IMG/VR virus record: IMGVR_UViG_3300032675_000001
Span: 296,684 to 360,683 of that record
DNA: 64,000 nucleotides
Reading direction: 5' to 3' (one strand)
In this document: positions 26,632-51,221 of the stretch, in pieces
How the letters are laid out: every line of letters begins with the position of its first letter
How positions within the stretch are numbered: position 1 is the first letter of the stretch
Translations under genes and position numbers: made by a program
The notes under the pieces: generated by a model
Database searches by the model: none
What the model saw: the letters and a program-made list of their open reading frames with translations, nothing else
Told to the model about the DNA's origin: nothing

Positions 26632-26641
26632 GGCTCTATCC

Positions 26642-29749: not shown

Positions 29750-29760
29750 CTTTGTAATCC

Positions 29761-30588: not shown

Positions 30589-30599
30589 GTCAAGGCTCC

Positions 30600-31055
30600 T
30601 TAAAACGCAAATGTCGCAATAGGAACATTGACCACTGTTTGATTGCCTGAACTGTCAACTACCGTGAGTTGCACATTGGTGCCTGTTTTTAGGTAACTAA
30701 TGGTGTTTCCATCTAGATTAAATGTTCCTGCGTTGGATGATCCTCCGGCTTGGAACAAGTTGTTTGACAACTGTGTTGCAAGCTGTGCATACACTTGTGA
30801 AGTAAACAGAGAAATAAACTTAGCTAGAGGAGTGTTTGATGCAGCAGCGGCGGCGGCTGCTTGAGCAGATGCTAATGCATTTGCATTTGAGGCAGCATTA
30901 GAAGACTCTAACGACTGCACCGAAAGTACATGGTTAGACCAGTTGATGCCATTAAATGAAGGGTCTTTAAACTGCTGAATCAGTGGATCAGCATGTGCCG
31001 TTCCTGCAATACTAAGTGCTGTGATTAGAGAAAGTGCTTTTAATATTTTTCTCAT
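30600..31055 (-). CDS. csgF: curli assembly component CsgF
   Basis: signal peptide then L..QFKDPSFNG (CsgF F.NP.FGG N-terminal motif); adjacent to csgG. Confidence 0.85.
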   Translation of the reverse strand: MRKILKALSLITALSIAGTAHADPLIQQFKDPSFNGINWSNHVLSVQSLESSNAASNANALASAQAAAAAAASNTPLAKFISLFTSQVYAQLATQLSNNLFQAGGSSNAGTFNLDGNTISYLKTGTNVQLTVVDSSGNQTVVNVPIATFAF

Positions 31056-31699: not shown

Positions 31700-31746
31700 A
31701 GTAAAACCCCAGTGTTTTGTTTACACTGAGGTGTTACTATTATTTA
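31700..31746 (-). promoter_or_regulatory. late promoter and leader hairpin of curli/cyclase operon
   Basis: TAAATA 31741-31746; 16-bp stem 31700-31738 with G-U pair valid only on minus strand. Confidence 0.6.
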
Positions 31747-31769
31747 GTCATTTTGGGTATTTTTAAGTA

Positions 31770-32081
31770 TCAGTAGATACTGCGTGGCATCTTTTCTTTT
31801 TGGGCAAAGTTGATCAGCGCATCAGTAAAGTCCATGGCGCTCTTGCAAGCCTGATTTTGCATGGCTTCACGATCAATCGGCTTGAGACCATTGTAAACAT
31901 CAAAGAAGGCGTGAATGGTCCGAAGAGGAATCTTCACCTTGTCCCCATCTTGGAAAACGATGTCGCGATTTCCACCAACATCAATGCTCTTGCGAAGCTG
32001 CATCGGAAGAACGGGAATCTTGTCGTAGTCGGGATCATTGATCAGAGCGTCTTCGTAGAATGCCTTAGTCATTGTGGTCAC
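31770..32081 (-). CDS. hypothetical early protein
   Basis: ORF with TTGACA promoter at ~32126 and AAAGG SD. Confidence 0.7.
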   Translation of the reverse strand: MTTMTKAFYEDALINDPDYDKIPVLPMQLRKSIDVGGNRDIVFQDGDKVKIPLRTIHAFFDVYNGLKPIDREAMQNQACKSAMDFTDALINFAQKEKMPRSIY

Positions 32082-32133
32082 CTTTCGTTTGTGATGACAG
32101 TCTTCTAAGGCATGTAAATCAACGTGTCAACAG

Positions 32134-33582
32134 TTATTTTTGAAAAAGTGAAAATAAATTCCCAGTGACATAGTTCTTATCTTGTCCAAACATACTATGT
32201 TGTAAATGCTTGATAATATCTGGGGTAAGGTGTCTTGCTCTCATTCCCCCACGAGGAAAAAGATGCACTTCTACTGGTTCATCGCCTTCAACCTTTTGAA
32301 TAGCCATCATGCGATTGCGCCCTTCATGACCACTGACTCTGGCATCTTTACTGAAGTCACCGTCTTCCCATTCTCGTGGAATATCTATGGTCAAAAAGGG
32401 TGAACCCAATGCTCCACCTTGTTCAATATGACCTGCAATGTGATCAACGCTTGTGGGATTGTTTAATCTGTGAGCAAGCTTTAAAAACATACTCGGTTTC
32501 ATCAAAACACGCAATCCCATGTAATCCACGTTAGCATTATATGGAACAGAACCAAGCCCGTTTTCGTTGTCTACTTTGTATTCATCAAGTTCTGATTCTT
32601 TTATGTCTTTTGGCATTGCATAAAAGATATGCTTACCTACAGCGGCAAGTTTTTTAGTTCCTTTTGCCCAATATGGATGAATATCTTTGGTGTGATAAAA
32701 GACTGCACCGTGTGTTGGGTCAGGAGCATGACCAGACATGATCTTCTTGGCAAGCTCATAGCTCTTGGCCCATAGCTTGTAATCAAGACCTTTGCCAGTG
32801 TTTTCAAGCTTCTTTAACCATGTATTGAAATCTTGACCACCGGGTGCTTTTCTGGACTTGATGATCTTATCAAGATGTTCCATTTCTTGTGCATATTTGT
32901 AGTTTGGATCGTTGTGGTTCCAGCAACTAAACTGACTTGGTTTTGTGGCAACACCAACAATACCTTGACCAAAACGTCTTGCGTGTGCCTTATCATTGGC
33001 GCGATTCTTAATGACATTACCGATTGCTAGCATACCATTTGCGCCTTGATCCCTTGCTTCTCCCCACATTGTGTGGGCAAGAATCTTAGTGGGGTCTTGG
33101 TGTACTGGTTGTGTTGCTGCTGGGAGATCAAAACGAACAACAGGATCAAACTGCTGCTGTTTATTGTGCATAGCCAATCCGCCTGCCGCCAAAGCCGCTG
33201 CGCCGCCTGCGGCTAGTGCACCCTTCTTAGCCCAATCGGGAAAAGCTTCATCAAGCGATTCATTCATACCTAAAGGAAGATTGGCAACATGCTGCAATGG
33301 AAGATTGACTAGTTTCAATGCACCACTCGCAAACTGTCTCCAGTAACCGGTATTATGAATATGCTGCATCATGTAATACAGATATCTTGCATCAAGAACA
33401 TCAGTAGCCGTTACCTTGATACCGATATTTTCTGGTGAATATTCCTTGGTTGGTGTGCCTACCGATTTGTCACTACCTTTGCGCTGAAGCCAGAAATCAG
33501 CATCAGGAAAGTTTGTCTTCACTGTTGCTAAATCTTTGAGCCTTACGCCAGCGGATTCTGTTATGAACTCTTTCGCTCTCAT
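32134..33582 (-). CDS. multidomain late protein: HsdS/TRD-like + SleB-type cell-wall hydrolase (Hydrolase_2) + ParB-like
   Basis: start MRAKEFITE; LAHTMWGEAR..G..GM.A...VI.NR, QFSCWN, DPT.GA.FYH, G.H.FY; C-term GHEGRNR. Confidence 0.75.
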   Translation of the reverse strand: MRAKEFITESAGVRLKDLATVKTNFPDADFWLQRKGSDKSVGTPTKEYSPENIGIKVTATDVLDARYLYYMMQHIHNTGYWRQFASGALKLVNLPLQHVANLPLGMNESLDEAFPDWAKKGALAAGGAAALAAGGLAMHNKQQQFDPVVRFDLPAATQPVHQDPTKILAHTMWGEARDQGANGMLAIGNVIKNRANDKAHARRFGQGIVGVATKPSQFSCWNHNDPNYKYAQEMEHLDKIIKSRKAPGGQDFNTWLKKLENTGKGLDYKLWAKSYELAKKIMSGHAPDPTHGAVFYHTKDIHPYWAKGTKKLAAVGKHIFYAMPKDIKESELDEYKVDNENGLGSVPYNANVDYMGLRVLMKPSMFLKLAHRLNNPTSVDHIAGHIEQGGALGSPFLTIDIPREWEDGDFSKDARVSGHEGRNRMMAIQKVEGDEPVEVHLFPRGGMRARHLTPDIIKHLQHSMFGQDKNYVTGNLFSLFQK

Positions 33583-35816
33583 TATCCAATCCGCTCTGCT
33601 CGTATATGTCGAGAATTCCAAGTTGGGTTTTCTCGTCTAGCGATATTTATTGCTTCTTCCGCACTTGAAGCAGTCACATTGGATATACCACTGGCGTCTC
33701 CTCTATGGACTCTCCATAACGCTGGTGCTGTTTCTGTATTTTCAGATGATGAAGTATTACCATTTTCTGCTTCTTCCCAGCGAGCATTAAATCGCATGAT
33801 CCAATTAATCTGAGCATCAGTTAGGTTTTCATAGTCTTGATCATGTGGGTCAACGTGAGGAAGACCTTGTTGATCGCACCATAGTTCATATTCACGAGTT
33901 AGTTGATCAATAGCTTGCGCTCTTGGTCCATCCTGTTGAGGAGCATATGCATTGACATCATCTGAAGGAGTAGGAGGTGTTTGGCGGCGACCGGGTTCGG
34001 CAACGTCAACAGAAATATTCTGTAGTGGCATAGTTCTCCACACGTGATTGCGAGCCGCCAGCCTATTATATGCCACTTCTGAATTGGGACCAGATGCGTA
34101 TGCAGGAGCAACTGAACCATCACGTGTCATAAATCTATATGTTGTTTCACCCTCGGCAGGCTCATCAAGAATGCCCTGTGGATCATTTTCACCAGATAGT
34201 ATCTTAGCTAGTTCATCGTTCGTTTTACGATTGTACTTCTTCTTTGCAAGAGCACCGGCAAGTTCTTCCTTATTAAGTTCACCGGCCATATATCTAGCAA
34301 ATAAACTCATTTCTGCCTTAGGGTCTTTTGGTTTAAGTAACTTATATAATCCCTTTAAGTATTCTTTACGATACTTCTGTGGATCACAAGCTGCATCAAG
34401 TGCTACGACAAATCTCAACACAGTATTTTCAATCTTACTAAAGTTAGAGTTTAACCAATCATTACCGGGACCACGAAACTCAACCCAGTTTTCTTTAGTA
34501 TTAATACTGGTGAACTTTCTGGTTGACCCATTATGAATAATCTTACTTGCTATTTCTTCCATATTACTGCGTAATTTTTCAAATAATCTTTCTGTTTCCT
34601 GTGGATTATCTTTTGCTTTATTTTTAATAATATCAAGTGCAGACTCACAGTAAGAGTTAGCTATACGACCAAACTGGTTAAGAACATACTGATCTCCGGA
34701 AAGAATAGCAAGCTTTACATAATCCAAGTTACTTTTACTATAGTTAGGAACACTTACGTTCATGTGTAAACCGCATGAACTATTAGTGTATGCACCAACG
34801 TCATCTGCCCATTCTTTAATCTTGGAGATATCATCAAACATTTCATCTACTGGCAGTGGAGGACTAATAAACTCTAATCCTGCCTCATCTGAACCATATG
34901 CTCTTAAACTAGAATCTGGTTCAATAGTATACCCATCAGATGTTCTGCGAGCACCGTGATATGATGAACTCCAGTTTACGCTGCGCCCGATGGCGTCTTC
35001 AAATCTGCTAGCGACTTCTTCAATGGATTCGCCGCCATTGTTGTTATATACTGGTTCAGGATCACTCCAGCGGGTCCATGCTAAATCATTATTACGGTTC
35101 ATTCGGTGATTATATACGTCATCCATATCATTGATACCGATGCTCTCTAGGAACTCTTCTTGATCAACCTCATCACGATCAAATCCGTATATGTATGGGC
35201 TATTTTCATCTGGGTCGGCTTCATCGTCTTCATCATAACTATAATAGTTTGGAATCATGTCGCCGTCTTTAAATGACTCGTATGCTTGATCGTAATAGTT
35301 GTAGCCAGCAGCATTGCCGGGTCTTTTCCATTCCTCATCGGCTACTTCTTCGTAATCTTCTTTAGTGGGAATACGATCACCCAATAGGTCTTCTGGTTTA
35401 TCTAGATAATCAGCAATATCTGATGGATCAGCATTTTTCTTAATCCAGTTTAAAAGATATTCCTTGCCTCTTTTTTCCCAATCTTTTTTGACATATGTTT
35501 CTAAATATTCATCAAACTTTTCTTCTAATACCCGTCTTAATTCGGCAATAGTGGATCGGGTATTGTGATCACGTTCATCAAAGAAATCAACAATGTCATC
35601 AATGCTTCTAGCAGGCTCATTTTCATCGTAACGTTCTGGGTCTTGGTAGTCTGGTTCATCATCCTCGGTGTTAACGTCAGGAACGATCATTTCAAACTCC
35701 ATACCAACCTTAGCATCAATCTGATTAGCCAGTTTTTTAAGGTTAGTAGGACTCATCTCCACTTCAAGGAGTTGTTGTTGTGCTTCGTATAGGTCAAGGA
35801 AATGTTTTGCTCTCAT
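33582..35816 (-). CDS. amidoligase (COOH-NH2 ligase family) protein
   Basis: VGMEFEM, EPDSSL, LEFISPP, CGLH.NVS, KF.SIN, VEFR. Confidence 0.8.
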   Translation of the reverse strand: MRAKHFLDLYEAQQQLLEVEMSPTNLKKLANQIDAKVGMEFEMIVPDVNTEDDEPDYQDPERYDENEPARSIDDIVDFFDERDHNTRSTIAELRRVLEEKFDEYLETYVKKDWEKRGKEYLLNWIKKNADPSDIADYLDKPEDLLGDRIPTKEDYEEVADEEWKRPGNAAGYNYYDQAYESFKDGDMIPNYYSYDEDDEADPDENSPYIYGFDRDEVDQEEFLESIGINDMDDVYNHRMNRNNDLAWTRWSDPEPVYNNNGGESIEEVASRFEDAIGRSVNWSSSYHGARRTSDGYTIEPDSSLRAYGSDEAGLEFISPPLPVDEMFDDISKIKEWADDVGAYTNSSCGLHMNVSVPNYSKSNLDYVKLAILSGDQYVLNQFGRIANSYCESALDIIKNKAKDNPQETERLFEKLRSNMEEIASKIIHNGSTRKFTSINTKENWVEFRGPGNDWLNSNFSKIENTVLRFVVALDAACDPQKYRKEYLKGLYKLLKPKDPKAEMSLFARYMAGELNKEELAGALAKKKYNRKTNDELAKILSGENDPQGILDEPAEGETTYRFMTRDGSVAPAYASGPNSEVAYNRLAARNHVWRTMPLQNISVDVAEPGRRQTPPTPSDDVNAYAPQQDGPRAQAIDQLTREYELWCDQQGLPHVDPHDQDYENLTDAQINWIMRFNARWEEAENGNTSSSENTETAPALWRVHRGDASGISNVTASSAEEAINIARRENPTWNSRHIRAERIG

Positions 35817-35843
35817 TGAGGTATTTATCAAACTTTAGGATTG

Positions 35844-38435
35844 TTATGATGAAACAGGACGAACCGCAAACACATCACGCGCCTGTGATGGTGTTAGCCC
35901 GTGGCTACCAAGATTTACATAATCACGCAATCTTACGATTGCATCATGCTCGCTTCTTGCCGGAAATACTGAACCTGGAACCGGCTGATTGGTTCTAGTG
36001 TCAATCAAATGATATGGTTTAGGTGCTTCTGCCAATCTTTGGTTCTGTCTTATAACATAACCTTCTGCATAACGTGGATCGAACTCCTGTCTAACCGCAG
36101 TTACAGACCCAGCAGGGAATTTTTCATAATCCAGTTTGGTAGCTATATCTGACGCTTCTTCTTCGGATTTAGCTACCACATAATCATACCCATTCATATT
36201 ATGAACACGATACATTTTAATGTCGGAAGGGTCAATGGGATTTGCGTCAATTTCTTCACGTTCTTTACGCTGACGAATCATGTCTTCTTGTGCTCTTTTG
36301 TATGCTTCAACACTGTTATCAGAAGGACTATCTTCATATACATGACATGCAATATTATTTTCACTAATGCTAGGTTCTATCTGCTTAGCAATAGCGGTTG
36401 CTTCATCAACACTTTTTGCAGCTATATAACCATTGAAGCGTTCTCTCCATATAACCGAGGCAAATTCTCTGACAATAAATATTTTTTCACGGCTTAGCCA
36501 CTTTTCAGCAAATGCAAGTTTTTCGTTTTGAAGATTCAATAAGTTTCTTGCATCCCTAAGTGATAACAATCTGTCCAGTTCAGAGACTCTAATATCGACC
36601 GCGCTAGATGGTATTTTTGCGAACGGAGATTCAATAGTTTTAACAATGTTCTCAGCCTCCTCTTCCGACTTAGCAAGAACAAGCATTACTTTACTATTAT
36701 ATTCTATCTTATATTCTTTAAGTTCACTATCAACATCAATATGATGTCTTTTAACGGTTACATACTGTACAGTATTTTTATTGAATATTTTTGGCTCATA
36801 TCCTTGTGCAGCCTTCAATGCCTCCGCACCATTATCTACTTGAGGAGTATTCTTGATGTAAACAGTGTGATGCTTTTCACCATCATCATAAATGACTTCC
36901 CAATCACCATCATCTACTTGATCATCATTAAGCCTAATAACACCATTTTTTGACAAACGATCTGCTTTTTTGAACATCAGTTCATCAGCATATCTTTGTT
37001 TAGTGATGTCACCAGCCATATATTTTGCAAACAAACTCGTTTGTTCACTTTTTTGAGTTGATGGAAGTGCTTTATACAATGCCTTCAAGTATTCTTTACG
37101 ATACTTTTGTGGATCACATGCGGCATCAAGTGCCACTACATATCTAAGCACGGTGTTTTTAAGTTTATCTATATTATCATCAAGCCAATTATTTCCAGGT
37201 GCGCGGATTTCAACCCATCCTGACTTAGTATTGACGCTTGTGTATTTGTCAGTGTTTCCGGAATGTAGGACCTTACTTGCTATTTCTTCCATTCCTGATC
37301 GTAGTTTCGTGAGTAATTGTTCTACCTTTTTTTGATCGGTTGCTCTATCTTTAATGATTTCAAGTGATGATTCTGCATAATACCATCCCGTTCTTCCGAA
37401 AATTTCAAGAACATGTTCATCACCAGACAATAATACAAGTTTTACCCAATCAAGTTTGTCGCGACTATAATTTGGCACGCTAATGTTTACGTGAAGACCA
37501 CAATCTGAATTGGTTTTGCAACCGTAATCTTTTGCCCATTCAATTATCTTGTCCATGTCATCAAACGTTTCCGTTATTCCCGGTGGTGGAGTTGGACTGA
37601 TCAATTCCAGCCCATCATATCCATCTATGGGATTTTTGTCACCGACACTAGAATCTCTTTCTAAAGAATATCCGTCTGGTCTTCTTGGAGCAGAGTGATA
37701 GCTTGTTCCAACATAAACTTTTTTTCCTAAAGCGGATGAAATTTCCTCACCAACTTCATCGATGGAAACATTCCCTTGAGTAGGATATGTCCAGTGTGGC
37801 CAAGTAATGTCTGCTCTTCTCAGATTACGAATAACATCCGACATGTTTCTGATACCAATGGAACGTAAAAAGTCTTGTTGACTTAAGTTAACATAATCAT
37901 ATCCATCCATAAACTCTTCACGGGCATCATCGTAATAAGAATCTTCCTCATCCCAAGACTTTTTTGCTGCTTCTTTATAGTCTTCTGGAGTTGGTTCATA
38001 TTCTTCTTCGTCGTTTACTTCTCTTTCCAAATATTCAGCAATGTCTTCATCTGATACGTTGTTTTTGATCCAGTAGTATAACTCTTGTTTACCATCGGAT
38101 GCCCAGATTTCAATTTTTTGTTCATCTGCCCATTCACGAAATCTTTCTTCAAGTTCTTCACGCAAGTCATTGATTTCACTTCTGCCATTATAATCACCAT
38201 CATGAAAGAAGTTACAAATGTCATCAATGTCATTTGCGCGTTCGTCGGCATCCCAATCTTCTTCCCGATCAGCATCCTCATCGTTTCCCTCTACATCAGG
38301 GACAAACATTTCATATTCAATGCCAACTTTAGCATCAACATTGCTAGCAAGCTTCTTTAGGTTTGAAGGAGACATTTCTACTTCAAATAGTTGTTGCTGT
38401 GCCTCATAAAGGTCAAGGAAGTGTTTTGCTCTCAC
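35844..38435 (-). CDS. amidoligase protein, tandem paralogue
   Basis: VGIEYEM, ERDSSV, LELISP, CGLHVNIS, KY.SVN, VEIR; N-terminus nearly identical to 33582-35816. Confidence 0.8.
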   Translation of the reverse strand: MRAKHFLDLYEAQQQLFEVEMSPSNLKKLASNVDAKVGIEYEMFVPDVEGNDEDADREEDWDADERANDIDDICNFFHDGDYNGRSEINDLREELEERFREWADEQKIEIWASDGKQELYYWIKNNVSDEDIAEYLEREVNDEEEYEPTPEDYKEAAKKSWDEEDSYYDDAREEFMDGYDYVNLSQQDFLRSIGIRNMSDVIRNLRRADITWPHWTYPTQGNVSIDEVGEEISSALGKKVYVGTSYHSAPRRPDGYSLERDSSVGDKNPIDGYDGLELISPTPPPGITETFDDMDKIIEWAKDYGCKTNSDCGLHVNISVPNYSRDKLDWVKLVLLSGDEHVLEIFGRTGWYYAESSLEIIKDRATDQKKVEQLLTKLRSGMEEIASKVLHSGNTDKYTSVNTKSGWVEIRAPGNNWLDDNIDKLKNTVLRYVVALDAACDPQKYRKEYLKALYKALPSTQKSEQTSLFAKYMAGDITKQRYADELMFKKADRLSKNGVIRLNDDQVDDGDWEVIYDDGEKHHTVYIKNTPQVDNGAEALKAAQGYEPKIFNKNTVQYVTVKRHHIDVDSELKEYKIEYNSKVMLVLAKSEEEAENIVKTIESPFAKIPSSAVDIRVSELDRLLSLRDARNLLNLQNEKLAFAEKWLSREKIFIVREFASVIWRERFNGYIAAKSVDEATAIAKQIEPSISENNIACHVYEDSPSDNSVEAYKRAQEDMIRQRKEREEIDANPIDPSDIKMYRVHNMNGYDYVVAKSEEEASDIATKLDYEKFPAGSVTAVRQEFDPRYAEGYVIRQNQRLAEAPKPYHLIDTRTNQPVPGSVFPARSEHDAIVRLRDYVNLGSHGLTPSQARDVFAVRPVSS

Positions 38436-38438
38436 GTG

Positions 38439-38882
38439 TTATGCTCGCGAAGTTTTAAGAATTGAACGCAACATCCAGTTATGCTTACCATGAGCATCAA
38501 TGCGTTCTGCAATGAAGTTTGCAATACCTTGCTCATCCGCGTCTTCTGCAAGATGAAATGCTTCTTTCCACATTGCAAGTAATCTCTGATTATCTTCGTA
38601 GAGTTCTTGCATCATCAACTCTGCACGAGGAATCTTTATTTGGTCCTGTATCTGGCTTAACTCAGAAAAACGAACAAGGCTACCTGGAGCATATGAATCA
38701 AGTTGACGAATCATTTCGGCAGTACGATCAATAGAGTTATCATACACTTCTGAATATAGTTCATCAAGAAACTTGTGATATTGAGGGAAATCAGCGCCTT
38801 CAATATTCCAATGAAAGTTTTGCGTTTTGATTGAAAACGCATAAGATGTTGCTAATAGTGTTTTCAGTGCGTCAGCGAGCAT
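38439..38882 (-). CDS. dps: Dps/ferritin-like protein
   Basis: NFHWNIEG.DF..YH..L.E.Y.E....D..AE; WMLRS. Confidence 0.9.
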   Translation of the reverse strand: MLADALKTLLATSYAFSIKTQNFHWNIEGADFPQYHKFLDELYSEVYDNSIDRTAEMIRQLDSYAPGSLVRFSELSQIQDQIKIPRAELMMQELYEDNQRLLAMWKEAFHLAEDADEQGIANFIAERIDAHGKHNWMLRSILKTSRA

Positions 38883-38905
38883 TGATATAATCCTTATTGG
38901 ACTAT

Positions 38906-40447
38906 TTATGCTTCCTCATTCACATCAACATACTTAATAGGCTTATGTGACATCGCTGCTGCCAATGCTCTGTGGTGTCCATCAATGATTCTATCACCTG
39001 CAAGCACTATTATTTGCTGGGAAAGATTAGGATTATTTTGATAATCAGATACTATAGCTTCCTGTTCAGGTTGCATTTTATAAAACAAATCTTCTAAATC
39101 ATCAACACCATATTGATTTGATAGTACCTGTTCCAACACAAATGGTTGAATGGTATGAACAGTAAATGGTATATCAAAGTCATTATCACCTACAAAGTTC
39201 CAAATCATTTCATCATGATCAGGATAAGCACCATCATAAATGTCTGATAGAGTTATAGTTTGGTTGCCTACACTTTCATATGTGCTGGCTAATGTTCTTC
39301 GCTGTCCACGACCATGATGCTTAGTATATTGATGTTCTTGCTCATATGTGGTTGGACCACCCACCATTGCTCCACCACTGTTACCTGCTGATCCACCACC
39401 TAACCCAGTGCTTACTGTTTCATTCTGGACATAGCTGTGCCCTCTACGTGCAGGGTCCCAATCACCATTATCATCGTCACTATCATCAACATCAAGATAG
39501 CTATTATTGCCCCATGTGTCATAATCCTGATCATCGTGATCATCTTGATAGCCATGGTGTTTATGATCATCAAGCATATCAAGTGCATCATATAGTTGAT
39601 GAAGCGGAACCCCAGCGTGAGAATATCCTATTTTGACCATTTGAATATATTGTCTTGATGGAACTGTTCCTTGCACCCGTCTAAGTGTATAAGGAGTCAT
39701 TACATAAACTTCTGCTACATATTTCTCGCCATCACAGTATACGGGATATGTTCTACGATCATATAGCTCTGGATACCCTTCAACCTGATCAAGTTGACTT
39801 ATAATACGTCTATCAACTTCCCATAAGCAGCCATAAACTTTACTACCGCTATGTGGTTCTACGTTTGCATATTGATACATTACATATTCAAAGTTGCGAA
39901 GTTCGGCAACTCCAATCAGATGAATACCTTCCATGTTATTTGGATCACACAGCATACCATAACTGAAATAGTATGTCGGAAGTCCCCCTGCCTCGTGTAG
40001 TTCTTGATTGCTAGAAACGTCTTTTGGTGCATTTTCTATCTGTTCAAGTGGAAGACCGTGTTCTGTATATCCTTCCTCACAACTTTCAACATACCATTCT
40101 GGTGTATCTGGTTTGTTTTTATGAGTAGGGTCCATGATATAAGTCATTGCTCTTACTGGACCATGTTCTGTGTCTATTTGGACTGGGACACGATTATATG
40201 CTTTATGCAATCCTTCATCATGATCCAACTCTTTTAGGTCTTTGGTATTGACTCTCCAAAGAATGCCGTAGCATTGTGTATCATCTTCATTTTCAAGATC
40301 AGCATAGTGACGGAATACAAGTTTAAAGTTCTTCAATACACCTTTGCCGAGCAGCTTGGCAGAAGGGCATCGTTCTTTCATGATATGAGTATTTGTGTTG
40401 TGACCATATGCAAAGTAGTTAATGGTTTCAACTTCATCTGCTCTCAC
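38906..40447 (-). CDS. tandem GGCT domains + C-terminal ParB/Srx-like domain
   Basis: start reassigned to GTG 40447 (MRADEV); YFAYGHN, YFSYGML, LD..EG..Y.R twice; IIDGHHR. Confidence 0.8.
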   Translation of the reverse strand: MRADEVETINYFAYGHNTNTHIMKERCPSAKLLGKGVLKNFKLVFRHYADLENEDDTQCYGILWRVNTKDLKELDHDEGLHKAYNRVPVQIDTEHGPVRAMTYIMDPTHKNKPDTPEWYVESCEEGYTEHGLPLEQIENAPKDVSSNQELHEAGGLPTYYFSYGMLCDPNNMEGIHLIGVAELRNFEYVMYQYANVEPHSGSKVYGCLWEVDRRIISQLDQVEGYPELYDRRTYPVYCDGEKYVAEVYVMTPYTLRRVQGTVPSRQYIQMVKIGYSHAGVPLHQLYDALDMLDDHKHHGYQDDHDDQDYDTWGNNSYLDVDDSDDDNGDWDPARRGHSYVQNETVSTGLGGGSAGNSGGAMVGGPTTYEQEHQYTKHHGRGQRRTLASTYESVGNQTITLSDIYDGAYPDHDEMIWNFVGDNDFDIPFTVHTIQPFVLEQVLSNQYGVDDLEDLFYKMQPEQEAIVSDYQNNPNLSQQIIVLAGDRIIDGHHRALAAAMSHKPIKYVDVNEEA

Positions 40448-40451
40448 GTGA

Positions 40452-40973
40452 TCAGCCCTTTGTCCACAATAACAAGTTATAGTTTCCACGACTGCTGGTC
40501 CAACTATCACCAGTCTTTTTGAAACCACCAAACTGCAGTAGTTTATTTATGGTAGTATTTTCTTCACGAGTAGTTGCGAATATTGGCGCATTAGTACTAC
40601 GAACAAGATTGCGGCACAAATATATGCCTACTCCTCTTGTACGATATTCTGATTTCACGAATGCATAACCGATTTCTAGGTTATAACGTCTTTCCAATTC
40701 TGGAACATTAGCTTCAATGAATACTTTGTGACGATAGACATTGATTGGATTTTTTAATGCAATAACGCCAACCGCCCTATCACCATCCATTGCATATGCA
40801 ATGCTCTCTGCATTTCTGAGATTCTTGTCTACAACGACCATATCAACTTCTGAACCTTCGGCAATCAACTGTGATAGTTGTGCCATTACATTGCGGCTAA
40901 TGTTACTCGCATTTCCGATATGATATTGAATAGTGGTTGTCTGATCTTCAAACAGGAACTCAAATGCTCTCAC
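40452..40973 (-). CDS. GNAT acetyltransferase
   Basis: EIGYAFV..EYR.RGVG; N......L...GF. Confidence 0.8.
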   Translation of the reverse strand: MRAFEFLFEDQTTTIQYHIGNASNISRNVMAQLSQLIAEGSEVDMVVVDKNLRNAESIAYAMDGDRAVGVIALKNPINVYRHKVFIEANVPELERRYNLEIGYAFVKSEYRTRGVGIYLCRNLVRSTNAPIFATTREENTTINKLLQFGGFKKTGDSWTSSRGNYNLLLWTKG

Positions 40974-42018
40974 CAGTTATTCCTTTTAGAATAGCACTTT
41001 CCTTTTTCATATGAGTTCCAGCCATCTTTGGTTTGAACTTGCGATATGATTGGCCAGCATAACCGCCTTGACCCATACCGCCGCCATATGAAGTGTCTTC
41101 TTCAAGTTCTCCATCTGCTTGACTGCCATCACAGTCATAATCACAGTTAACATCTCCACAATAGTCGCACTCAATCCATCCTACACCATGTCTGTGTTCA
41201 TCGTCATGTTGTTTTGAGAATGCATCTTTGTATTTGTCGTATTCTGTTTTTTTCTTTTTAAACGGAACCACATCGCCTTCATCCAACTCGCCAGCAGGAT
41301 GGGCGCGATAAGAAGTTGCGTTGTCAAAACTATCAAACTCATTGAGTTTTCCAGCAGGCTTTATTTTTACTTGACGCCATCCACCTTCTTGATAACCGAC
41401 TGCTGGGTAATCTGGATTCTCACTGATGGCACCTCTAAATGATCTATCCTTTAGACCACCATAAGGATTCACTGCTGGGGTTTTTTCTGCTGCAAAACGC
41501 ATATCAGTGTCTTCACCGAAATAAAGATTCTTCATTTCTTCTTCGGCGGCTGCGATAGTGTTTAGTGTATTAGCAAGTTGCTTGACGTTGTATGCAGCAG
41601 CTTTGAATGAACCTTTACTAATGTCATTTGCTAATGCAGTGGCTTCACCATGTGCTTTCTTCTTTAATCGTGATAGACTCATTGTTCCGGCACCACCAAG
41701 AATAGCAACTTCTGGATCGTCCTTATCATGACCTACAATAACGCCTTCTTTTACAGGAACACAAATATCCTTGCCGTCTTTGGTTCCAGCATATCTTTTG
41801 CCTTTCCAGCAACGCTTGCCGTCTGCACCCTTTTTGGCTTCTGTCTCATGCATTTCCTGCTTGATTTCAATCTTTTTGTTAGGGAACTTTACTCGCAACC
41901 TGTCTGCATCTTTTCTTGCTTCGGCTTGGTTGGCATATTTGGTTGAAGGCTTTCCATCAATATAGATAACCGAAACACTTTCAGATTCGTCAATAAGCCC
42001 CTTGATGATTGAACTCAT
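40960..42018 (-). CDS. modular late protein (probable head-internal)
   Basis: short modules separated by [ILV]xE; CWKG..Y.G.K....CVP module. Confidence 0.65.
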   Translation of the reverse strand: MSSIIKGLIDESESVSVIYIDGKPSTKYANQAEARKDADRLRVKFPNKKIEIKQEMHETEAKKGADGKRCWKGKRYAGTKDGKDICVPVKEGVIVGHDKDDPEVAILGGAGTMSLSRLKKKAHGEATALANDISKGSFKAAAYNVKQLANTLNTIAAAEEEMKNLYFGEDTDMRFAAEKTPAVNPYGGLKDRSFRGAISENPDYPAVGYQEGGWRQVKIKPAGKLNEFDSFDNATSYRAHPAGELDEGDVVPFKKKKTEYDKYKDAFSKQHDDEHRHGVGWIECDYCGDVNCDYDCDGSQADGELEEDTSYGGGMGQGGYAGQSYRKFKPKMAGTHMKKESAILKGITGESI

Positions 42019-42019
42019 T

Positions 42020-42691
42020 TTACTTACCCTTTTTGTGGTTTCTGTTGTTTAAATATCCACGTTTGTTGGCAGTTGCCCAAGCAATATCAGTTGCCTTGTC
42101 TTTTGACTTTCCTGCTTCACGTTCTGACTTGGCAATGTGCTTTACCATGCGATCAACTTTGGCACCTTCAAACGCTACACCACCAGCGATAGTTCCACCA
42201 TTTGGAATAGATTCAAAAGGCTTACCCGCATCCTGTTGACTTGCAAGATACTGCATTGTAGATGACATCATAGCCTTGATGCCACCGATCTTTTCTGATA
42301 CCCATTCAGGGAACTGATCTTTGTCAGAAAGTCTCTTTTCTAGTTCTGATGCTAGACGAACAATAGTGCGAAGGCTGTTTTTAAGGGTTTCACCTTCGTG
42401 TTCAGCTTTATCTGGATCATGAGGAACAAAGCCCGTTCTAGTATTACGGCCTTGACCGGGAACTACGATAATGTCTTCTTCATCAAGATGTGCTTCTGAA
42501 ACTTTCTTGGACTCACTGATAGAGTTGGCATAAGGACCCTTCTTCTTAGCCTTGCCCTTCATAACTTTAGATGCAGGTTGAAGTCCAGGAACATCTACAG
42601 ATTCCTTGGTTCTCTTTTGTGTAGTCATTGGCATCGCAACTGTTGCAACTGATCCTGCACACGTAGATTCGAAGATATCACTAATTTTCAT
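42020..42691 (-). CDS. modular late protein (probable head-internal)
   Basis: MKISDIFE start; late TAAATA 42715-42720; AWATANK C-terminal module. Confidence 0.65.
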   Translation of the reverse strand: MKISDIFESTCAGSVATVAMPMTTQKRTKESVDVPGLQPASKVMKGKAKKKGPYANSISESKKVSEAHLDEEDIIVVPGQGRNTRTGFVPHDPDKAEHEGETLKNSLRTIVRLASELEKRLSDKDQFPEWVSEKIGGIKAMMSSTMQYLASQQDAGKPFESIPNGGTIAGGVAFEGAKVDRMVKHIAKSEREAGKSKDKATDIAWATANKRGYLNNRNHKKGK

Positions 42692-42728
42692 TTATTAAAT
42701 CCTTGCTGATCTAGTATTTATCAAAAAC

Positions 42729-42757
42729 AAAAAAAGAGCCTCCATTTCTGGAGGCTC
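42729..42757 (-). terminator. intrinsic terminator
   Basis: GAGCCTCCA-GAAA-TGGAGGCTC followed by T7. Confidence 0.9.
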
Positions 42758-42784
42758 AAGTTTGCGCTAACTTATATTAATCTA

Positions 42785-43759
42785 TTAGGCTGCTTTCTTG
42801 GCCTTAGCCTTAGTTGCCTTTACTGGGGTTGCGATTCCAGCGGCAGTCAATGCTGCGGCTGTGGCATCTTCTGGTGCCGGTGCTGCTGCAGCCTCTGCCG
42901 CTGCCCTCTGTTGCTGTGCTTCAACGAACATCGGTCCAACAGTGTTGAGCAAGTGTTCCTGATTTTCCATACAGAATACATACGAACCAGAGTGGCGAAG
43001 CAATACGCGCTTGTCAACCCAGATACGACCACCAAGATCGCGCCAGTTTTCACAGAAAGTCCAGTCTTCAGAATAGTAACGATTCTGACGAACTGCGGTG
43101 TCGAAGTAGGTCTTTAAGTACTGATCGTACTTTGGATCAAGACCAATGTCATTCTTATACTGCTTTACAGCAGGATGTGCATTGAGCTTTTCAAAGACAT
43201 GCTTCTTCATGAGAAGGAAGCCTGTACCAGCCTTTGAAACTTCCTGAAGTCCATCTGGACCTTCTTCGGCACCTTCAAACCCGTTAACAACCCACTTGAT
43301 GGGCATAGTCTTCATTGGGTACAAACCACCGATAACGTCAACGTCCCTGTTCAAGAGGACCAGCAAATGCCAAGGTTCCCAACCGATATCAGCGTCAACG
43401 AAGAACAAGTGTGTTGCATCGGGCATGTCTAAAAACTTAGCAGTAAGAGTGTTACGTGCTCTGCTGATAAGAGATTCGTTTACCATTGTCTCAAGAGTCC
43501 AGTCAATGCCCAACTGGCGAGCAGTATTTGCCCACTTGATGAATGACATAAAAGTTGATTCAGTCAACATGCCGCCGTAGCAAGGCATTGCGATATGAAC
43601 CTTAGTTGTGCGAAGGAAGTCAACGTTAACTTGAATCTGTCCTTCTTGTGGCTGCTGTTCCTGAGCAGCCTGTTCAGCAATTTCCTGTACCTTTTCGACT
43701 GGAACAGTGCGTTCTTCGCCATTAGGTGCAATATTCTTAGTAGTTGGTTTACGTGCCAT
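42785..43759 (-). CDS. GT-A fold glycosyltransferase
   Basis: PCYGG, ESLISRARN, FFVDADI (DxD), GTGF, SEDW.FC. Confidence 0.85.
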   Translation of the reverse strand: MARKPTTKNIAPNGEERTVPVEKVQEIAEQAAQEQQPQEGQIQVNVDFLRTTKVHIAMPCYGGMLTESTFMSFIKWANTARQLGIDWTLETMVNESLISRARNTLTAKFLDMPDATHLFFVDADIGWEPWHLLVLLNRDVDVIGGLYPMKTMPIKWVVNGFEGAEEGPDGLQEVSKAGTGFLLMKKHVFEKLNAHPAVKQYKNDIGLDPKYDQYLKTYFDTAVRQNRYYSEDWTFCENWRDLGGRIWVDKRVLLRHSGSYVFCMENQEHLLNTVGPMFVEAQQQRAAAEAAAAPAPEDATAAALTAAGIATPVKATKAKAKKAA

Positions 43760-43817
43760 GTAGTCCTCTTCTTGTTGTAAACTATAAAGATATTTACATC
43801 GTGAAGAGGGGGTGAAA

Positions 43818-45134
43818 TTATTTTTCTTCTAAATAATCCACACTTTCATCTACTTTTTCAGGCTTTTGGGCAACTACTTTTGGTGCTTCCGGTTCTGGGG
43901 ATTTTTTGCTATCAACCTGGTCCTGTAGAGCATTGACACGCTTCATGAGCAGATTGATTTCTTTATCTTGACGCTTATCATCTTCTTCTGAGTGCATGAT
44001 ACTGCGCATCACGAAGCGAAGGAATGCCTGTTGCTTTGATGGCGCTGAAGGATAATGTGTTCTTGCAAACGCAGCAGTCTTGTGAAATTCTGGGTGAGTA
44101 TACAGTCTCTCAAACTCATCATCACTGACTATGTTTCCTTTGTCGTGCTTTTCTTCTGGAAGAAATCTAATCTCTGATCCATTGATCAAATAGAATCCAT
44201 CACCTAAAGATTCCATAACATCTTCGTTTTTTGGCTTCTTGTGGTGCTTCTTCATATTGATGGCAATAGCGGCCTGTTGAGCGGCATTTGCTGCTTCTTC
44301 CACGCTTTCATTCGGAACACAGTTAGGAACAGTTTTGCCATTCTTCTTTTTATTTCCAACTGGCTTGTAGCCTTTCCAGCATGGGTTGGTGTTTTTTAAT
44401 GTCTTCTTAGCCTCGCTAAGTAGTTCAAAAAACTTTGCCTTCTGTTCAAGTGTTGCTTCACTTAATAGTGGCTTTATCTTATTAACCAACTCTCTCACAC
44501 TTTCGGTGATTTGCAAGTTATTGTCAAATGTTTGCTTCATGTGCTGAGCCGCATCACCATACAAATCGGTGAGGATTCTTAACTTAGTTCTATCATTGGC
44601 ACCAGCATATGCTTTGCGAATAGCACTTGCATCACGCATAGTCTTGCCAGCAATTGGAAACTCTTGAACATCCGTAGTCATAACATAAGCATGACCAGTT
44701 CCCGGTGTTCCTTTAGTCATTGGTTGCAGATTCAGAGTTGCTTCCTTGGTGAATGGCTGCATATAACTTGGCTGACCATTCTTTGTTGGCTTGAATGAAA
44801 AGCGAGCGTCCTCATTCATGTCCTTTCCACTCACACCAAATACCAATGCAGTCTTGGTAGGGTCCATTCCCTTGCTTTGAAGGTGATTGGCATATTCCAT
44901 TGCGTTATATGGATTGCGGACAATCAAAATGTTCTTTGCAGGAATACCCAAAGTCTTAGCCATTCTCGCACGATCTTCTGCCAAAAATGGGCTATCAGGT
45001 TGTTCCTGTTTTGCTGAAATGGCAAGCAGTGTATTAGGCAAGCCAAACTTTTCAGCAAGCTGTTTGAAACTTGCTGCATGTCCCTTATGAAATGGGTGGA
45101 AACGCCCAGGCATCACTGCAATTATATTTTTCAT
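43818..45134 (-). CDS. HIGH-family nucleotidyl(cytidylyl)transferase fused to extra modules
   Basis: PGRFHPFHKGH, ASAIR; then CWKGY...VPNCVP and EAANAAQQAAIAI.MKK modules. Confidence 0.8.
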   Translation of the reverse strand: MKNIIAVMPGRFHPFHKGHAASFKQLAEKFGLPNTLLAISAKQEQPDSPFLAEDRARMAKTLGIPAKNILIVRNPYNAMEYANHLQSKGMDPTKTALVFGVSGKDMNEDARFSFKPTKNGQPSYMQPFTKEATLNLQPMTKGTPGTGHAYVMTTDVQEFPIAGKTMRDASAIRKAYAGANDRTKLRILTDLYGDAAQHMKQTFDNNLQITESVRELVNKIKPLLSEATLEQKAKFFELLSEAKKTLKNTNPCWKGYKPVGNKKKNGKTVPNCVPNESVEEAANAAQQAAIAINMKKHHKKPKNEDVMESLGDGFYLINGSEIRFLPEEKHDKGNIVSDDEFERLYTHPEFHKTAAFARTHYPSAPSKQQAFLRFVMRSIMHSEEDDKRQDKEINLLMKRVNALQDQVDSKKSPEPEAPKVVAQKPEKVDESVDYLEEK

Positions 45135-45865
45135 GGTTTATCCTTACATTTGTCGCCATGGAATCTTGCATACATATTATTGGCAAATGATCTTTCGCAA
45201 TACTGGCATGTTGTTCTATGTTTTCGTGATCTCTCTAGACATGCTTCTAAATGGCGTTCCGGAACGCCATTTCTGTGCATCGGATTAATATATCCTTCTG
45301 AATTTGTCAATTCTTTAATCTTTTTACTGATTTTATTTTTAGTAGAATCTGTTATTGTTTGTTTGGATCGTTTTTCTCGCATTAAGATTTTGGTACTGTC
45401 AGTGTGCGTTTTGTTACTCATTCCTGTTGTTTTGCCACGTTTATCGATTGCATCTTGATGCTTAGTTTTCACGACCGGATCATACATTGGGTTGTTCAGA
45501 GTCATTCTCTGAGACATTTCTTTTTTCGCCAGTTCCATGACATAGGAATATGTTCTGCTGTTGGTTTTGTATCTCTCTGATTGATGTTTATTTCCAGAAT
45601 ATGTCATTCGTCTAATAGCATATATCATTTTACTTTTTGCTTGACCAGACGTAATTTTTGTTAACAAGCGATGACATATGAAATGTTCCTTAGGTGTTAA
45701 CTGGACTAAATTTTCCTTAGAGTTAGACCCCCCTAGTGATTTTGGAATAATATGATGAATTTCTGAATATCTATCTGGTGCCAATGTTCTTTTCTTGGCA
45801 AAAGATATGACACTATAATATACTGCAGTATATTTGTTGTTCAGAAATTCATCAAACATTTTCAT
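45131..45865 (-). CDS. HNH homing endonuclease
   Basis: EIHHIIPKSLGGSN...NLV.LT.KEHFI.H.LL; NUMOD3-like repeats. Confidence 0.9.
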   Translation of the reverse strand: MKMFDEFLNNKYTAVYYSVISFAKKRTLAPDRYSEIHHIIPKSLGGSNSKENLVQLTPKEHFICHRLLTKITSGQAKSKMIYAIRRMTYSGNKHQSERYKTNSRTYSYVMELAKKEMSQRMTLNNPMYDPVVKTKHQDAIDKRGKTTGMSNKTHTDSTKILMREKRSKQTITDSTKNKISKKIKELTNSEGYINPMHRNGVPERHLEACLERSRKHRTTCQYCERSFANNMYARFHGDKCKDKP

Positions 45866-46427: not shown

Positions 46428-46457
46428 GAAATACTCCAATTATATGGAGTATTTATC

Positions 46458-49386: not shown

Positions 49387-49397
49387 TTTTAAATCCT

Positions 49398-51218: not shown

Positions 51219-51221
51219 AAA

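What the first reader, a model, noticed from the sequence alone, without database searches (positions are those of the whole stretch)
32134..45134. Cluster of putative capsid-packaged, protease-processed enzyme polyproteins with a shared MRA.. N-terminal tag
Seen: five late genes begin RTG-AGA-GC (MRAKEFITE 33582, MRAKHFLDLYE 35816 and 38435, MRADEVE 40447, MRAFEFLFE 40973). Neighbours begin MSSIIKGLIDE and MKISDIFE. Unrelated domains inside these proteins are separated by [ILV]-x-E motifs (e.g. NESLDE, ESELDE, ELHE, ITE, VEE). Known: T4 internal proteins carry an N-terminal capsid-targeting sequence of the MKT..EF..E type and are cut by prohead protease gp21 after [ILV]-x-E. Inference: SleB hydrolase, amidoligases, GGCTs, GNAT, ParB-like and nucleotidyltransferase domains are loaded into the head, cut into separate enzymes and injected with the DNA as a pre-made host-takeover kit.
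Basis: partly seen in the sequence, partly recalled or inferred. Interest (0 to 1): 0.8.

Follow-up and report, generated by a model that had tools for sequence, protein, structure and literature searches.

The report
Capsid-targeting-like leader on phage enzymes
An uncultivated 360-kb T4-related jumbo phage puts a short N-terminal tag of the MRAxEFITE type, very like the capsid-targeting sequence of T4, on many unrelated enzymes, and joins their domains through glutamate-ending linkers, which suggests they are loaded into the head, cut apart and injected.

Summary
Five genes start RTG-AGA-GC (MRA...) at the stated coordinates. With three neighbours they form one unit bounded by terminators (31706-42757, minus strand).

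The tag is a peptide signal, not a DNA signal:
- Synonymous codons vary freely.
- Arg is AGA or CGN.
- Conservation stops at the Glu.

A pattern scan of IMG/VR found at least 240 MRAxEFITE starts, on at least 12 unrelated cargo families. These include SLT, GH19, SleB, GNATs, a T7 gp0.7-like kinase and ParB/Srx-like domains. The same scan found 5 in 596 Gb of cellular genomes.

A module that follows the tag in one protein also occurs inside other proteins. There it is preceded by Glu in 13 of 15 cases (background 6%), and usually by hydrophobic-x-Glu.

The tag resembles leaders cut by T4 gp21 (MKTYQEFIAE, MAKINELLRE). Related jumbo phages encode gp21. In cultured phage RsoM2USA the ParB/Srx-like module stands alone with the leader MQTFKQFLSE, two genes after the capsid gene.

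Packaging, cleavage and injection are inferred, not shown. This phage's own gp21 gene was not retrieved. The nucleotidyltransferase gene and the Dps-like gene carry no tag.

Verdict: a new variant of the T4 internal-protein system, merged with the polyvalent-protein theme.

The parts
42736..42757 (-). Intrinsic terminator (9-bp GC-rich stem plus T run) that closes the upstream unit (genes J and I)
42714..42721 (-). ATAAATAC motif, similar to the T4 late promoter, 22 nt before gene H
   Evidence: 8 hits against 2.9 expected, all on the gene strand. One also sits before the virion structural gene at 52378.
42020..42691 (-). Gene H, 223 aa, leader MKISDIFE|S, function unknown. Homologs are common next to tagged genes elsewhere.
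   Evidence: L210 homolog starts MKISSLFE with GATAAATAC upstream
40960..42018 (-). Gene G, 352 aa, leader-like MSSIIKGLIDE|S. Contains a CWKG...C Cys module also seen in J and in tagged proteins elsewhere.
40452..40973 (-). Gene F, 173 aa, GTG start, leader MRAFEFLFE|D, weak GNAT
   Evidence: L007 homolog starts MRAFEFLTE
38906..40447 (-). Gene E, 513 aa, GTG start, leader MRADEVE|T. Two gamma-glutamyl cyclotransferase domains joined by L150-H-E152|A (39992-40000), then an acidic/Gly-rich linker and a C-terminal DGHHR domain (38909-39274).
   Evidence: The C-domain occurs alone behind MRAREFITLKE in L181.
38439..38882 (-). Gene D, Dps/ferritin-like, no leader. It is inside the unit but there is no evidence that it is tagged.
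35844..38435 (-). Gene C, 863 aa, GTG start, leader MRAKHFLDLYE|A. Amidoligase paralog with C-terminal repeats of a small domain.
35821..35828 (-). Second ATAAATAC motif, 4 nt before the ATG of gene B (same spacing as at the virion structural gene at 52378)
33582..35816 (-). Gene B, 744 aa, leader MRAKHFLDLYE|A, Amidoligase_2
   Evidence: The RsoM2USA_26 amidoligase starts MKLIQKLSE with ATAAATA upstream.
32134..33582 (-). Gene A, 482 aa. Leader MRAKEFITE (33556-33582); N-domain of unknown function; junction L110-D-E112|A (33247-33255); Gly/Ala-rich hydrophobic segment (33169-33231); SleB hydrolase (32620-33048); junction L332-D-E334|Y (32581-32589); ParB/sulfiredoxin-fold C-domain (32137-32580).
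31770..32072 (-). Gene K, 100 aa, starts MTKAFYE|D. Homologs elsewhere start MKINE[VIL]L.E|S behind GATAAATAC.
31706..31732 (-). Terminator-like stem-loop that ends the unit
43818..45134 (-). Gene J, cytidylyltransferase-like, no N-terminal leader, outside the unit. Its internal junction V278-E-E280|A (44295-44303) precedes a module (AANAAQQAAIAI...) that follows MRAKEFITE directly in another phage.

Best explanation
The unit 31706-42757 encodes cargo proteins of the phage head. Each tagged protein carries a 7-20 residue N-terminal leader. The consensus across the lineage is MRAxEFITE, with variants MKINEVLxE, MKISxIFE and MRAKHFLxLYE. The leader works like the capsid-targeting sequence of T4 internal proteins. 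It brings the protein into the scaffolding core of the prohead and ends in a hydrophobic-x-Glu site. The gp21-type prohead protease cuts there. The same kind of site separates domains inside the larger proteins: SleB | ParB/Srx-like in A, and GGCT | GGCT | ParB-like in E. The protease therefore also releases the domains as separate proteins. These leave the head with the DNA and act at the very start of infection, on cell wall opening, host protein or metabolite modification and DNA handling. Shown here: the tag, its selection at peptide level, its portability, the Glu rule at module junctions, the likeness to T4 leaders, and the domain identities. Inferred: targeting to the prohead, cleavage by gp21, ejection, and the host targets.
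For: (1) The tag is specific. A strict regular expression matched only this gene cluster and its homologs in 2 Mb of related loci, 29,239 candidate starts. (2) The tag is portable. In relatives the same SleB protein has the tag joined directly to the post-junction segment (L002), or has GNAT and ParB-like domains inserted exactly at the [LI]-D-E|A junction (L007, L006). L007 also has an internal linker AKKGEFIIE|S that copies the leader. (3) Census. The same pattern found 5 in 596 Gb of cellular genomes, all in MAGs. The 130 ORFs extracted from the AGA-form scan fall into 12 cargo clusters, including SLT, GH19+LysM, GNATs, DUF6934, DUF6321 and a T7 gp0.7-like kinase. (4) Selection is on the peptide. 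All degenerate codon positions vary. (5) Junction rule. Of 15 non-redundant cases where a module that follows the tag recurs inside another protein, 13 have Glu at P1 (background 6.3%) and 10 have [ILVM]-x-E (background 1.1%). The two exceptions are an alignment offset and a weak match. All 8 homologs of the A C-domain are preceded by [LIV]-x-E, and that linker is disordered in the model. (6) T4 leaders read from NC_000866: IPII/III MKTYQEFIAE|A, IPI ...ITE|A, gp24 MAKINELLRE|S, gp22 MLKEQLIAE|A. T4 internal proteins are described as diverse proteins sharing only the CTS (PMC3012670). (7) gp21 homologs sit in the head modules of related jumbo phages: K64-1, pEa_SNUABM_47, RsoM2USA ORF379 and hundreds of IMG/VR contigs. 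(8) RsoM2USA ORF385 is the A C-domain alone behind MQTFKQFLSE|D, with ATAAATA upstream, two genes after the major capsid gene. (9) Just beyond the window end, this phage encodes a 208-aa protein that starts MKSLKHFIAE|S. Its PA5oct homolog is a mass-spectrometry-verified structural protein, and its Atu_ph07 homolog starts MKTLQDYLTE|S. (10) ATAAATAC motifs, similar to the late promoter, precede H, B and the virion structural gene at 52378.
Against: There are no virion proteomics or N-terminal data for any tagged protein. The gp21 gene of this phage was not retrieved: about 60 kb walked outside the window held tail, replication and Clp genes but no head module. The abundant L097-type gp21 lineage could not be tied to this genome on one contig. 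MRADEVE/MKTNDIE has the hydrophobic residue at P2, not P3. P1' after the tag is very variable, whereas T4 sites mostly have Ala or Ser. D has no tag. The SleB domain is preceded by a SAR-like hydrophobic segment, which fits an exported lysis enzyme as well. Large enzymes such as 860-aa amidoligases are bigger than the T4 internal proteins shown, whose genes encode about 95 to 193 residues. The Glu rule could partly reflect how the genes were fused, each module dragging the end of its own leader, rather than present-day cleavage.
Confidence: 0.6

Rival explanations
1. The leader and the Glu junctions are processing sites of polyproteins that mature in the cytoplasm and are never packaged. They are cut by another protease, for example a zincin-like peptidase carried as cargo (as proposed for polyvalent proteins) or the phage's own Clp system.
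For: One tagged protein in L181 has an HExxH motif. Polyvalent proteins are proposed to be cut by an embedded metallopeptidase (PMC5512222). The phage encodes ClpA/B-like and DnaJ proteins in the window, and ClpX, ClpS and ClpP nearby.
Against: No peptidase domain was found in the window proteins. The site pattern, hydrophobic at P3 and Glu at P1, is that of T4 gp21. The leader matches T4 prohead-core leaders. One module sits in a head gene module behind a late-type promoter motif.
Confidence: 0.15
2. The leader is an uncleaved N-terminal element with another role. It could be a start-region cassette that supports translational coupling and gene shuffling, or a short helix that binds a common partner.
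For: Tagged genes lack Shine-Dalgarno sequences and three use GTG. Half of the AGA-form starts overlap an upstream stop as ATGA. Tagged genes form tandem arrays.
Against: Codons vary synonymously at every degenerate position, and Arg is AGA or CGN, so the constraint is on the peptide. Conservation ends exactly at Glu. Internal junctions obey the same Glu rule without any start codon.
Confidence: 0.1
3. Protein A, and the other tagged muralytic proteins, are lysis enzymes (SAR-type endolysins) and not ejected proteins.
For: WAKKGALAAGGAAALAAGGLA, directly before the SleB domain, looks like a signal-anchor-release segment. L203 has a similar segment before GH19.
Against: The hydrophobic segment is not N-terminal in A. 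It is preceded by 117 residues here and by about 360 in L007. The window has a separate untagged GH19 enzyme (62166-62792), which could be the endolysin. The muralytic domain is fused to a ParB/Srx-like domain, an architecture reported for late-gene, head-associated polyvalent proteins. Internal core proteins with muralytic domains are known (T7 gp16, my own knowledge).
Confidence: 0.1
4. The shared start is chance plus paralogy.
For: B and C are paralogs. Loose [ILVMF]-x-E near the N-terminus occurs in 13% of other genes.
Against: Searches show a lineage-wide, specific motif on unrelated proteins.
Confidence: 0.01

Closest known systems
T4 internal proteins IPI, IPII, IPIII (and Alt) with the capsid targeting sequence, cut by prohead protease gp21
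   Same: A short N-terminal leader is shared by otherwise unrelated, fast-evolving proteins. The leader ends in hydrophobic-x-Glu. The sequences are very alike (MKTYQEFIAE against MRAKEFITE, MKSLKHFIAE, MQTFKQFLSE). The genes are clustered behind late-type promoter motifs. gp21 is present in related phages.
   Different: A different, uncultivated jumbo-phage lineage (DNA polymerase 42-46% identical to Atu_ph07 and its group). There are far more cargo families, and many are large multi-domain enzymes rather than small basic proteins. The same Glu-ending site recurs between domains, giving polyproteins. Nothing has been shown experimentally.
Polyvalent proteins of phages and conjugative elements (Iyer et al. 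2017, PMC5512222), including P1 DdrB/DarB
   Same: Several unrelated effector domains sit in one polypeptide. The repertoire overlaps: ParB-like fused to a muralytic domain, GNAT, kinase. The context is late genes. Delivery with the DNA and cutting into units are predicted.
   Different: No MuF anchor or embedded zincin peptidase was found in the window proteins. Targeting and cutting would instead use a T4-type leader and the prohead protease. The domains also circulate as single tagged genes.
Ejection and inner-body proteins of phiKZ-like phages (SPN3US gp245 protease; PMC5694885, PMC7411985)
   Same: Jumbo phages that pack many proteins into the head and trim them after Glu with a gp21-related protease.
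   Different: In those phages P3 is small (A/S/G-x-E, my own knowledge) and the propeptides are long. Here P3 is hydrophobic and the leader is about 9 residues, as in T4.
T7 gp16 and similar internal core proteins with a transglycosylase domain
   Same: A muralytic domain is carried inside the head and used during DNA entry. This could explain the tagged SLT, GH19 and SleB cargos.
   Different: There is no shared leader or protease processing in T7, and no homology.

Membership tests
T4-type capsid targeting sequence / internal protein system | A short N-terminal leader shared by otherwise unrelated proteins of one phage | tested here: met
   Four independent families in the window. At least 12 cargo clusters across the lineage.
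T4-type capsid targeting sequence / internal protein system | The leader ends in the gp21 site (Leu/Ile-x-Glu) | tested here: met
   ITE, LYE, LFE, IDE, IFE and FYE. The exception is E (EVE/DIE).
T4-type capsid targeting sequence / internal protein system | Sequence likeness to the T4 leaders | tested here: met
   Compared with IPI, IPII, IPIII, gp22 and gp24 read from NC_000866. This is likeness by eye, with no statistical model.
T4-type capsid targeting sequence / internal protein system | The phage encodes a gp21-family prohead protease and a scaffolding core | tested here: inconclusive
   Present in related jumbo phages and in many IMG/VR relatives. Not found in the window or in about 60 kb walked around it. 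The rest of the 363-kb genome could not be read.
T4-type capsid targeting sequence / internal protein system | Late expression | tested here: inconclusive
   ATAAATAC motifs before H, B and a virion structural gene. No transcript data.
T4-type capsid targeting sequence / internal protein system | The protein is found in the virion with the leader removed | not testable with these tools
   Needs virion mass spectrometry. The RsoM2USA study identified only the ten strongest bands.
Polyvalent proteins (Iyer et al. 2017) | Two or more unrelated effector domains in one polypeptide in a phage late-gene context | tested here: met
   A: SleB plus ParB/Srx fold. E: two GGCT domains plus a DGHHR domain. 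The L007 homolog of A adds GNAT and ParB-like domains.
Polyvalent proteins (Iyer et al. 2017) | An embedded zincin-like peptidase or MuF head anchor | tested here: not met
   No such Pfam hit in any window protein. An HExxH motif occurs only in a separate tagged protein of L181.
phiKZ/SPN3US-type propeptide processing | Cleavage motif with a small residue at P3 (A/S/G-x-E) | tested here: not met
   P3 at 13 junctions is L, V, M, F or I in 11.
SAR endolysin (for protein A only) | An N-terminal weakly hydrophobic Gly/Ala-rich anchor directly before the muralytic domain | tested here: inconclusive
   The segment is present (residues about 118-138) but not N-terminal. It becomes N-terminal only after a cut at LDE|A, or in the L002 homolog.

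The most novel reading that the evidence does not exclude
This abundant freshwater-type jumbo-phage lineage uses a general 'address plus Glu junction' grammar. Any domain placed behind MRAxEFITE, or behind a hydrophobic-x-Glu linker, is loaded into the head and released as a separate protein. Each genome would then carry an exchangeable set of many injected enzymes: wall hydrolases, kinase, acetyltransferases, ParB/Srx-like enzymes, and an amidoligase with gamma-glutamyl cyclotransferases that could add or remove peptide-like marks on host targets within seconds of infection. That would be the largest and most modular injected-effector system known in phages, and a natural toolbox for packing foreign proteins into capsids.
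Probability: 0.35. Interest if true: 0.85.

Novelty: new variant of a known kind. Interest (0 to 1): 0.7.

Why it matters
If true, it extends T4's internal-protein principle, so far a speciality of T-even phages, to a widespread group of uncultivated jumbo phages. It also links that principle to the polyvalent-protein idea through a simple rule that can be tested: tag at the N-terminus, Glu at every module boundary. It would let injected proteins be predicted from sequence alone in metagenomes. It names candidate first-minute host-takeover enzymes (amidoligase, GGCT, GNAT, kinase, ParB/Srx-like). It also offers new leader peptides for loading proteins into large capsids. Cultured carriers of related leaders (RsoM2USA, Atu_ph07) make it testable by ordinary virion mass spectrometry.

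Tried and rejected
- Megablast of the region against 50,697 phage records found no match.
- Neither the tagged 125-aa family nor the A C-domain has a homolog in cultured phages, except RsoM2USA for the A C-domain.
- Retrieving this contig's gp21 with the search for related loci, using a gp21 alignment and then a close environmental gp21, failed.
- A DNA polymerase scan linked tagged contigs to this lineage, but no contig appeared in both the gp21 and the tag lists. FASTA headers carry no contig names.
- tblastx of the window and of the walked loci against the gp21 loci gave no shared flanks.
- Five look-ups walked the genome through sibling 363-kb contigs. One side held tail fibre, tube, sheath, gp13, gp15 and DnaB. 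The other held ligase, ClpX, Hsp20, ClpS and ClpP. There was no head module. The 208-aa protein there is not gp21.
- Pfam gave nothing for the unknown parts: the A N-domain, the A C-domain, the E C-terminus, G, H and K.
- A PDB sequence search for the E C-terminus gave nothing.
- A literature search for the leader strings found no paper. The phiKp24 capsid paper does not mention cleavage.
- A nucleotide-level signal as the cause of 'AGA GC' is rejected, because CGN leaders are as common.
- TATAAATA, the exact T4 late promoter, is not enriched; the local form is ATAAATAC.
- The protein-atlas look-alikes of the 125-aa family are at chance level. 'IpIV internal head protein' scored 0.58, which is a lead only.
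Full report
**Where the window comes from.** The window is the last 64 kb of IMGVR_UViG_3300032675_000001 (360,683 bp). The same phage was assembled as 363-kb contigs in several JGI samples. Its DNA polymerase is 42-46% identical to those of Sinorhizobium phage Phosso, Agrobacterium phage Atu_ph07, Vibrio phage 2.275.O, Xanthomonas XaC1 and the Yersinia, Erwinia and Serratia jumbo phages. That places it in the T4-related 'Rak2-like' or group 2.2 jumbo phages of Iyer et al. (PMC7824862). Nearly all genes lie on the minus strand. No cultured phage matches the region at DNA level.

**The observation.** The five starts are exactly as described:
- 33582 ATGAGAGCG, MRAKEFITE
- 35816 ATGAGAGCA and 38435 GTGAGAGCA, MRAKHFLDLYE
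- 40447 GTGAGAGCA, MRADEVE
- 40973 GTGAGAGCA, MRAFEFLFE

RTGAGAGC occurs 9 times against 3.8 expected, and five of the nine are these starts. Five of the six ORFs in the window that can start MRA are these genes. None has a Shine-Dalgarno sequence. All either follow the upstream stop within a few bases or overlap the upstream gene (A with the stop of B, F with the end of G), or sit 4 nt behind an ATAAATAC motif.

Domain identities are mostly confirmed:
- A: SleB-type Hydrolase_2
- B: Amidoligase_2, and C is its paralog
- D: Dps/ferritin-like
- E: two gamma-glutamyl cyclotransferase domains
- F: weak GNAT
- J: cytidylyltransferase-like

**Anatomy of the unit.**
- A strong terminator at 42757-42736 is followed by ATAAATAC at 42721-42714 and gene H.
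- A terminator-like hairpin at 31732-31706 follows gene K.
- Between them lie H, G, F, E, D, C, a second ATAAATAC at 35828-35821, then B, A and K.
- ATAAATAC occurs 8 times against 2.9 expected, always on the gene strand. It also sits 4 nt before the 'virion structural protein' gene at 52378.
- It resembles the T4 late promoter TATAAATA (my own knowledge). Related motifs precede tagged genes in other contigs.
- Genes I and J lie upstream of the terminator and are not part of the unit.

**The tag is a conserved, portable peptide.** Related IMG/VR contigs keep it:
- L007 has MRAFEFLTE, MKTNDIE, MRAKQFLELYE twice, and MRANEFITE.
- L006 has MRAKHFLELYE and MKINEVLTE.
- L002 has MKATDIYSLYE, MRAKEFITE, and MRATEFITE on an unrelated 231-aa protein.

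A strict pattern matched nothing else among 29,239 candidate starts in 2 Mb of related loci. Between homologs the leader codons differ synonymously.

The 130 extracted ORFs all start at the head of their reading frames. They fall into 12 cargo clusters:
- a large family of about 125-aa proteins
- SLT transglycosylase
- GH19 with LysM
- several GNATs
- DUF6934 and DUF6321
- a T7 gp0.7-like kinase, and others

The same leader with Arg encoded by CGN is as common, again at least 120 stretches. Every degenerate codon position varies. The constraint is therefore on the peptide. The AGA seen here is explained in part by ATGA stop-start overlaps, found in 63 of 123 cases.

In 596 Gb of bacterial and archaeal genomes the pattern occurs five times, all in MAGs. 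Three of the five are contigs of one Haliscomenobacter MAG. No paper in the library holds these strings.

**Module junctions.** In the A family, whole domains are present or absent exactly at a conserved [LI]-D-E|A-[FL]-P-x-W-A-K-G junction.
- L002 joins the leader directly to that point.
- L006 inserts a GNAT domain.
- L007 inserts a GNAT domain plus a ParB-like domain, and has an internal linker AKKGEFIIE|S that copies the leader.

I tested this generally. I took the 12 residues that follow the tag in each protein and looked for them inside other proteins. This gave 15 non-redundant cases:
- 13 are preceded by Glu (background 6.3%).
- 10 are preceded by [ILVM]-x-Glu (background 1.1%).
- The two exceptions are an alignment offset and a 7/12 match.

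Examples:

| After the tag | Inside another protein |
|---|---|
| L276 MRAKEFITE\|ATNAAQQAAIAI | J ESVEE\|AANAAQQAAIAI |
| L220 ITE\|SAAWQKS | L282 ELLDE\|SAAWKRS |
| L180 ITE\|DLRKWFKEKW | L181 EQLEE\|DLRKWF |

All eight homologs of the C-domain of A are preceded by [LIV]-x-E. In E the two cyclotransferase domains are joined by L-H-E|A, which is L-S-E|A in L007. The C-terminal domain of E occurs alone behind MRAREFITLKE in L181.

**Domain identities added here.**
- The C-domain of A folds with pLDDT 82, and its first 20 residues (the linker) are disordered.
- Its 30 best PDB matches are all ParB/sulfiredoxin-superfamily proteins. Probability is 0.8-0.97 for most of the top 20 and lower further down. 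E-values are modest, 0.035 to 0.6.
- A muralytic domain fused to a ParB-like domain in late-gene context is an architecture described for polyvalent proteins. P1 DdrB is reported to be head-associated (PMC5512222).
- The C-terminus of E (DGHHR motif) gave a weaker model, and only a weak ParB-N hit with E = 0.6.

**Comparison with T4.** These leaders were read from the T4 record:
- IPII and IPIII: MKTYQEFIAE|A
- IPI: MKTFKEF...ITE|A
- gp24: MAKINELLRE|S
- gp22: MLKEQLIAE|A
- gp67: MEGLIE|A
- gp23: cut site ...FLTE|A

The cut positions marked are from my own knowledge of T4. The local leaders (MRAKEFITE|S, MKINEVLTE|S, MKISDIFE|S, MRAFEFLFE|D) have the same length, charge pattern and ending. T4 internal proteins are described as a diverse set of defence-countering proteins sharing only the capsid targeting sequence (PMC3012670).

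**The protease.**
- gp21 homologs lie between the portal and capsid genes in K64-1 and pEa_SNUABM_47.
- RsoM2USA has one as ORF379, and so do hundreds of environmental contigs.
- In that environmental lineage the head proteins start MLDAFKQLVE|S (scaffold) and MSTKFEQLLDLLVNE (core), and the capsid protein has ...EALLE|GL.

**Links to cultured phages.**
- RsoM2USA ORF385 is the A C-domain alone (39% identity). It starts MQTFKQFLSE|D, has ATAAATA 18 nt upstream, and lies two genes after the major capsid gene ORF383.
- The RsoM2USA_26 amidoligase starts MKLIQKLSE behind ATAAATA.
- Just beyond the window end, this phage's own genome encodes a 208-aa protein that starts MKSLKHFIAE|S.
- Its PA5oct homolog is annotated 'structural protein, ESI-MS/MS', and its Atu_ph07 homolog starts MKTLQDYLTE|S.

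**What is not shown.** No data here show that any tagged protein is in a virion, is cut, or is injected. I could not retrieve this phage's gp21 gene. The scans are capped at 80 rows and were filled by other contigs. About 60 kb walked through sibling contigs held tail, replication and Clp genes only.

MRADEVE does not fit hydrophobic-x-Glu. D, I and J have no tag. The Gly/Ala-rich hydrophobic segment before SleB in A (residues about 118-138) looks like a SAR anchor, so a lysis role for A remains possible. The Glu rule could partly be a trace of how modules were fused. The junction sequences are not copies of EFITE, however, so Glu seems to be kept by selection.

**Verdict.** The best reading is a T4-type capsid-targeting and gp21-processing system. 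A large uncultivated jumbo-phage lineage has expanded it into a modular set of tagged enzymes and Glu-jointed polyproteins. It is a new variant of a known kind. Confidence is 0.6 for the mechanism and high for the tag and the junction rule themselves.

Noticed in passing
window 24005-31055 (minus strand): An island of envelope and signalling genes in a phage: an OmpA-like beta-barrel, a CHASE2-adenylate/guanylate cyclase, a FecR-domain protein, two secreted proteins, and curli-type CsgG and CsgF.
   Followed up: no
window 47119-50192; L500:14318-18250: The phage carries a near-complete Clp and chaperone set. ClpA/B-like ATPase and DnaJ are in the window. ClpX, Hsp20, ClpS and ClpP lie about 15 kb beyond the window start.
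   Followed up: partly
window 35821-35828, 42714-42721, 52383-52390, 52442-52449, 55744-55751, 46449-46456, 23933-23940, 7805-7812: The ATAAATAC motif occurs 8 times, all on the gene strand and mostly just upstream of genes. Twice it lies only 4 nt before an ATG, which would give leaderless late transcripts. The exact T4 form TATAAATA is not enriched.
   Followed up: partly
window 33169-33231 (protein A residues about 118-138): A Gly/Ala-rich hydrophobic segment (KKGALAAGGAAALAAGGLA) lies right after the LDE|A junction and before SleB. It resembles a SAR anchor. A similar segment precedes GH19 in L203.
   Followed up: partly
L497:11367-11993 (about 8 kb beyond the window end in the sibling contig): A 208-aa protein among the tail genes starts MKSLKHFIAE, almost the T4 IPII/III leader. 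It is a homolog of the mass-spectrometry-verified PA5oct structural protein EST35_0202.
   Followed up: yes
L181:8805-11528: A tandem array of tagged genes includes a standalone ParB-like protein (MRAREFITLKE) and a 174-aa protein with an HELVH metallopeptidase-like motif (MRAKEFIIE).
   Followed up: partly
L368, L371, L372 (NZ_JBBAKG01 contigs): Three contigs of one Haliscomenobacter MAG carry tagged genes. These are probably phage contigs binned with a host, which gives a hint that the host belongs to Bacteroidota.
   Followed up: no
window 45131-45865, 21025-21654, 22075-23293; L497:10404-10838: Several HNH or TnsA-like homing-endonuclease genes are scattered between conserved genes. One lies directly between J and the next gene.
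   Followed up: no
window 35844-36800 and 33582-34100 (C-terminal parts of C and B): The amidoligases end in two to four repeats of a small domain of about 60 aa (YRVHN..GY.YV.A.S.EEA..IA). Its number varies between homologs, and it matches phrog_9962.
   Followed up: no
window 50226-52378: Two 'virion structural protein' genes (phrog_12928, phrog_13138) are followed by a 330-aa protein with a GTA-type 3-TM holin domain.
   Followed up: no
L499:2112-3365: A 417-aa protein next to an RNA/DNA-ligase-like gene starts MKINEFKKTEQLDE|G. It is another possible leader in this genome.
   Followed up: no
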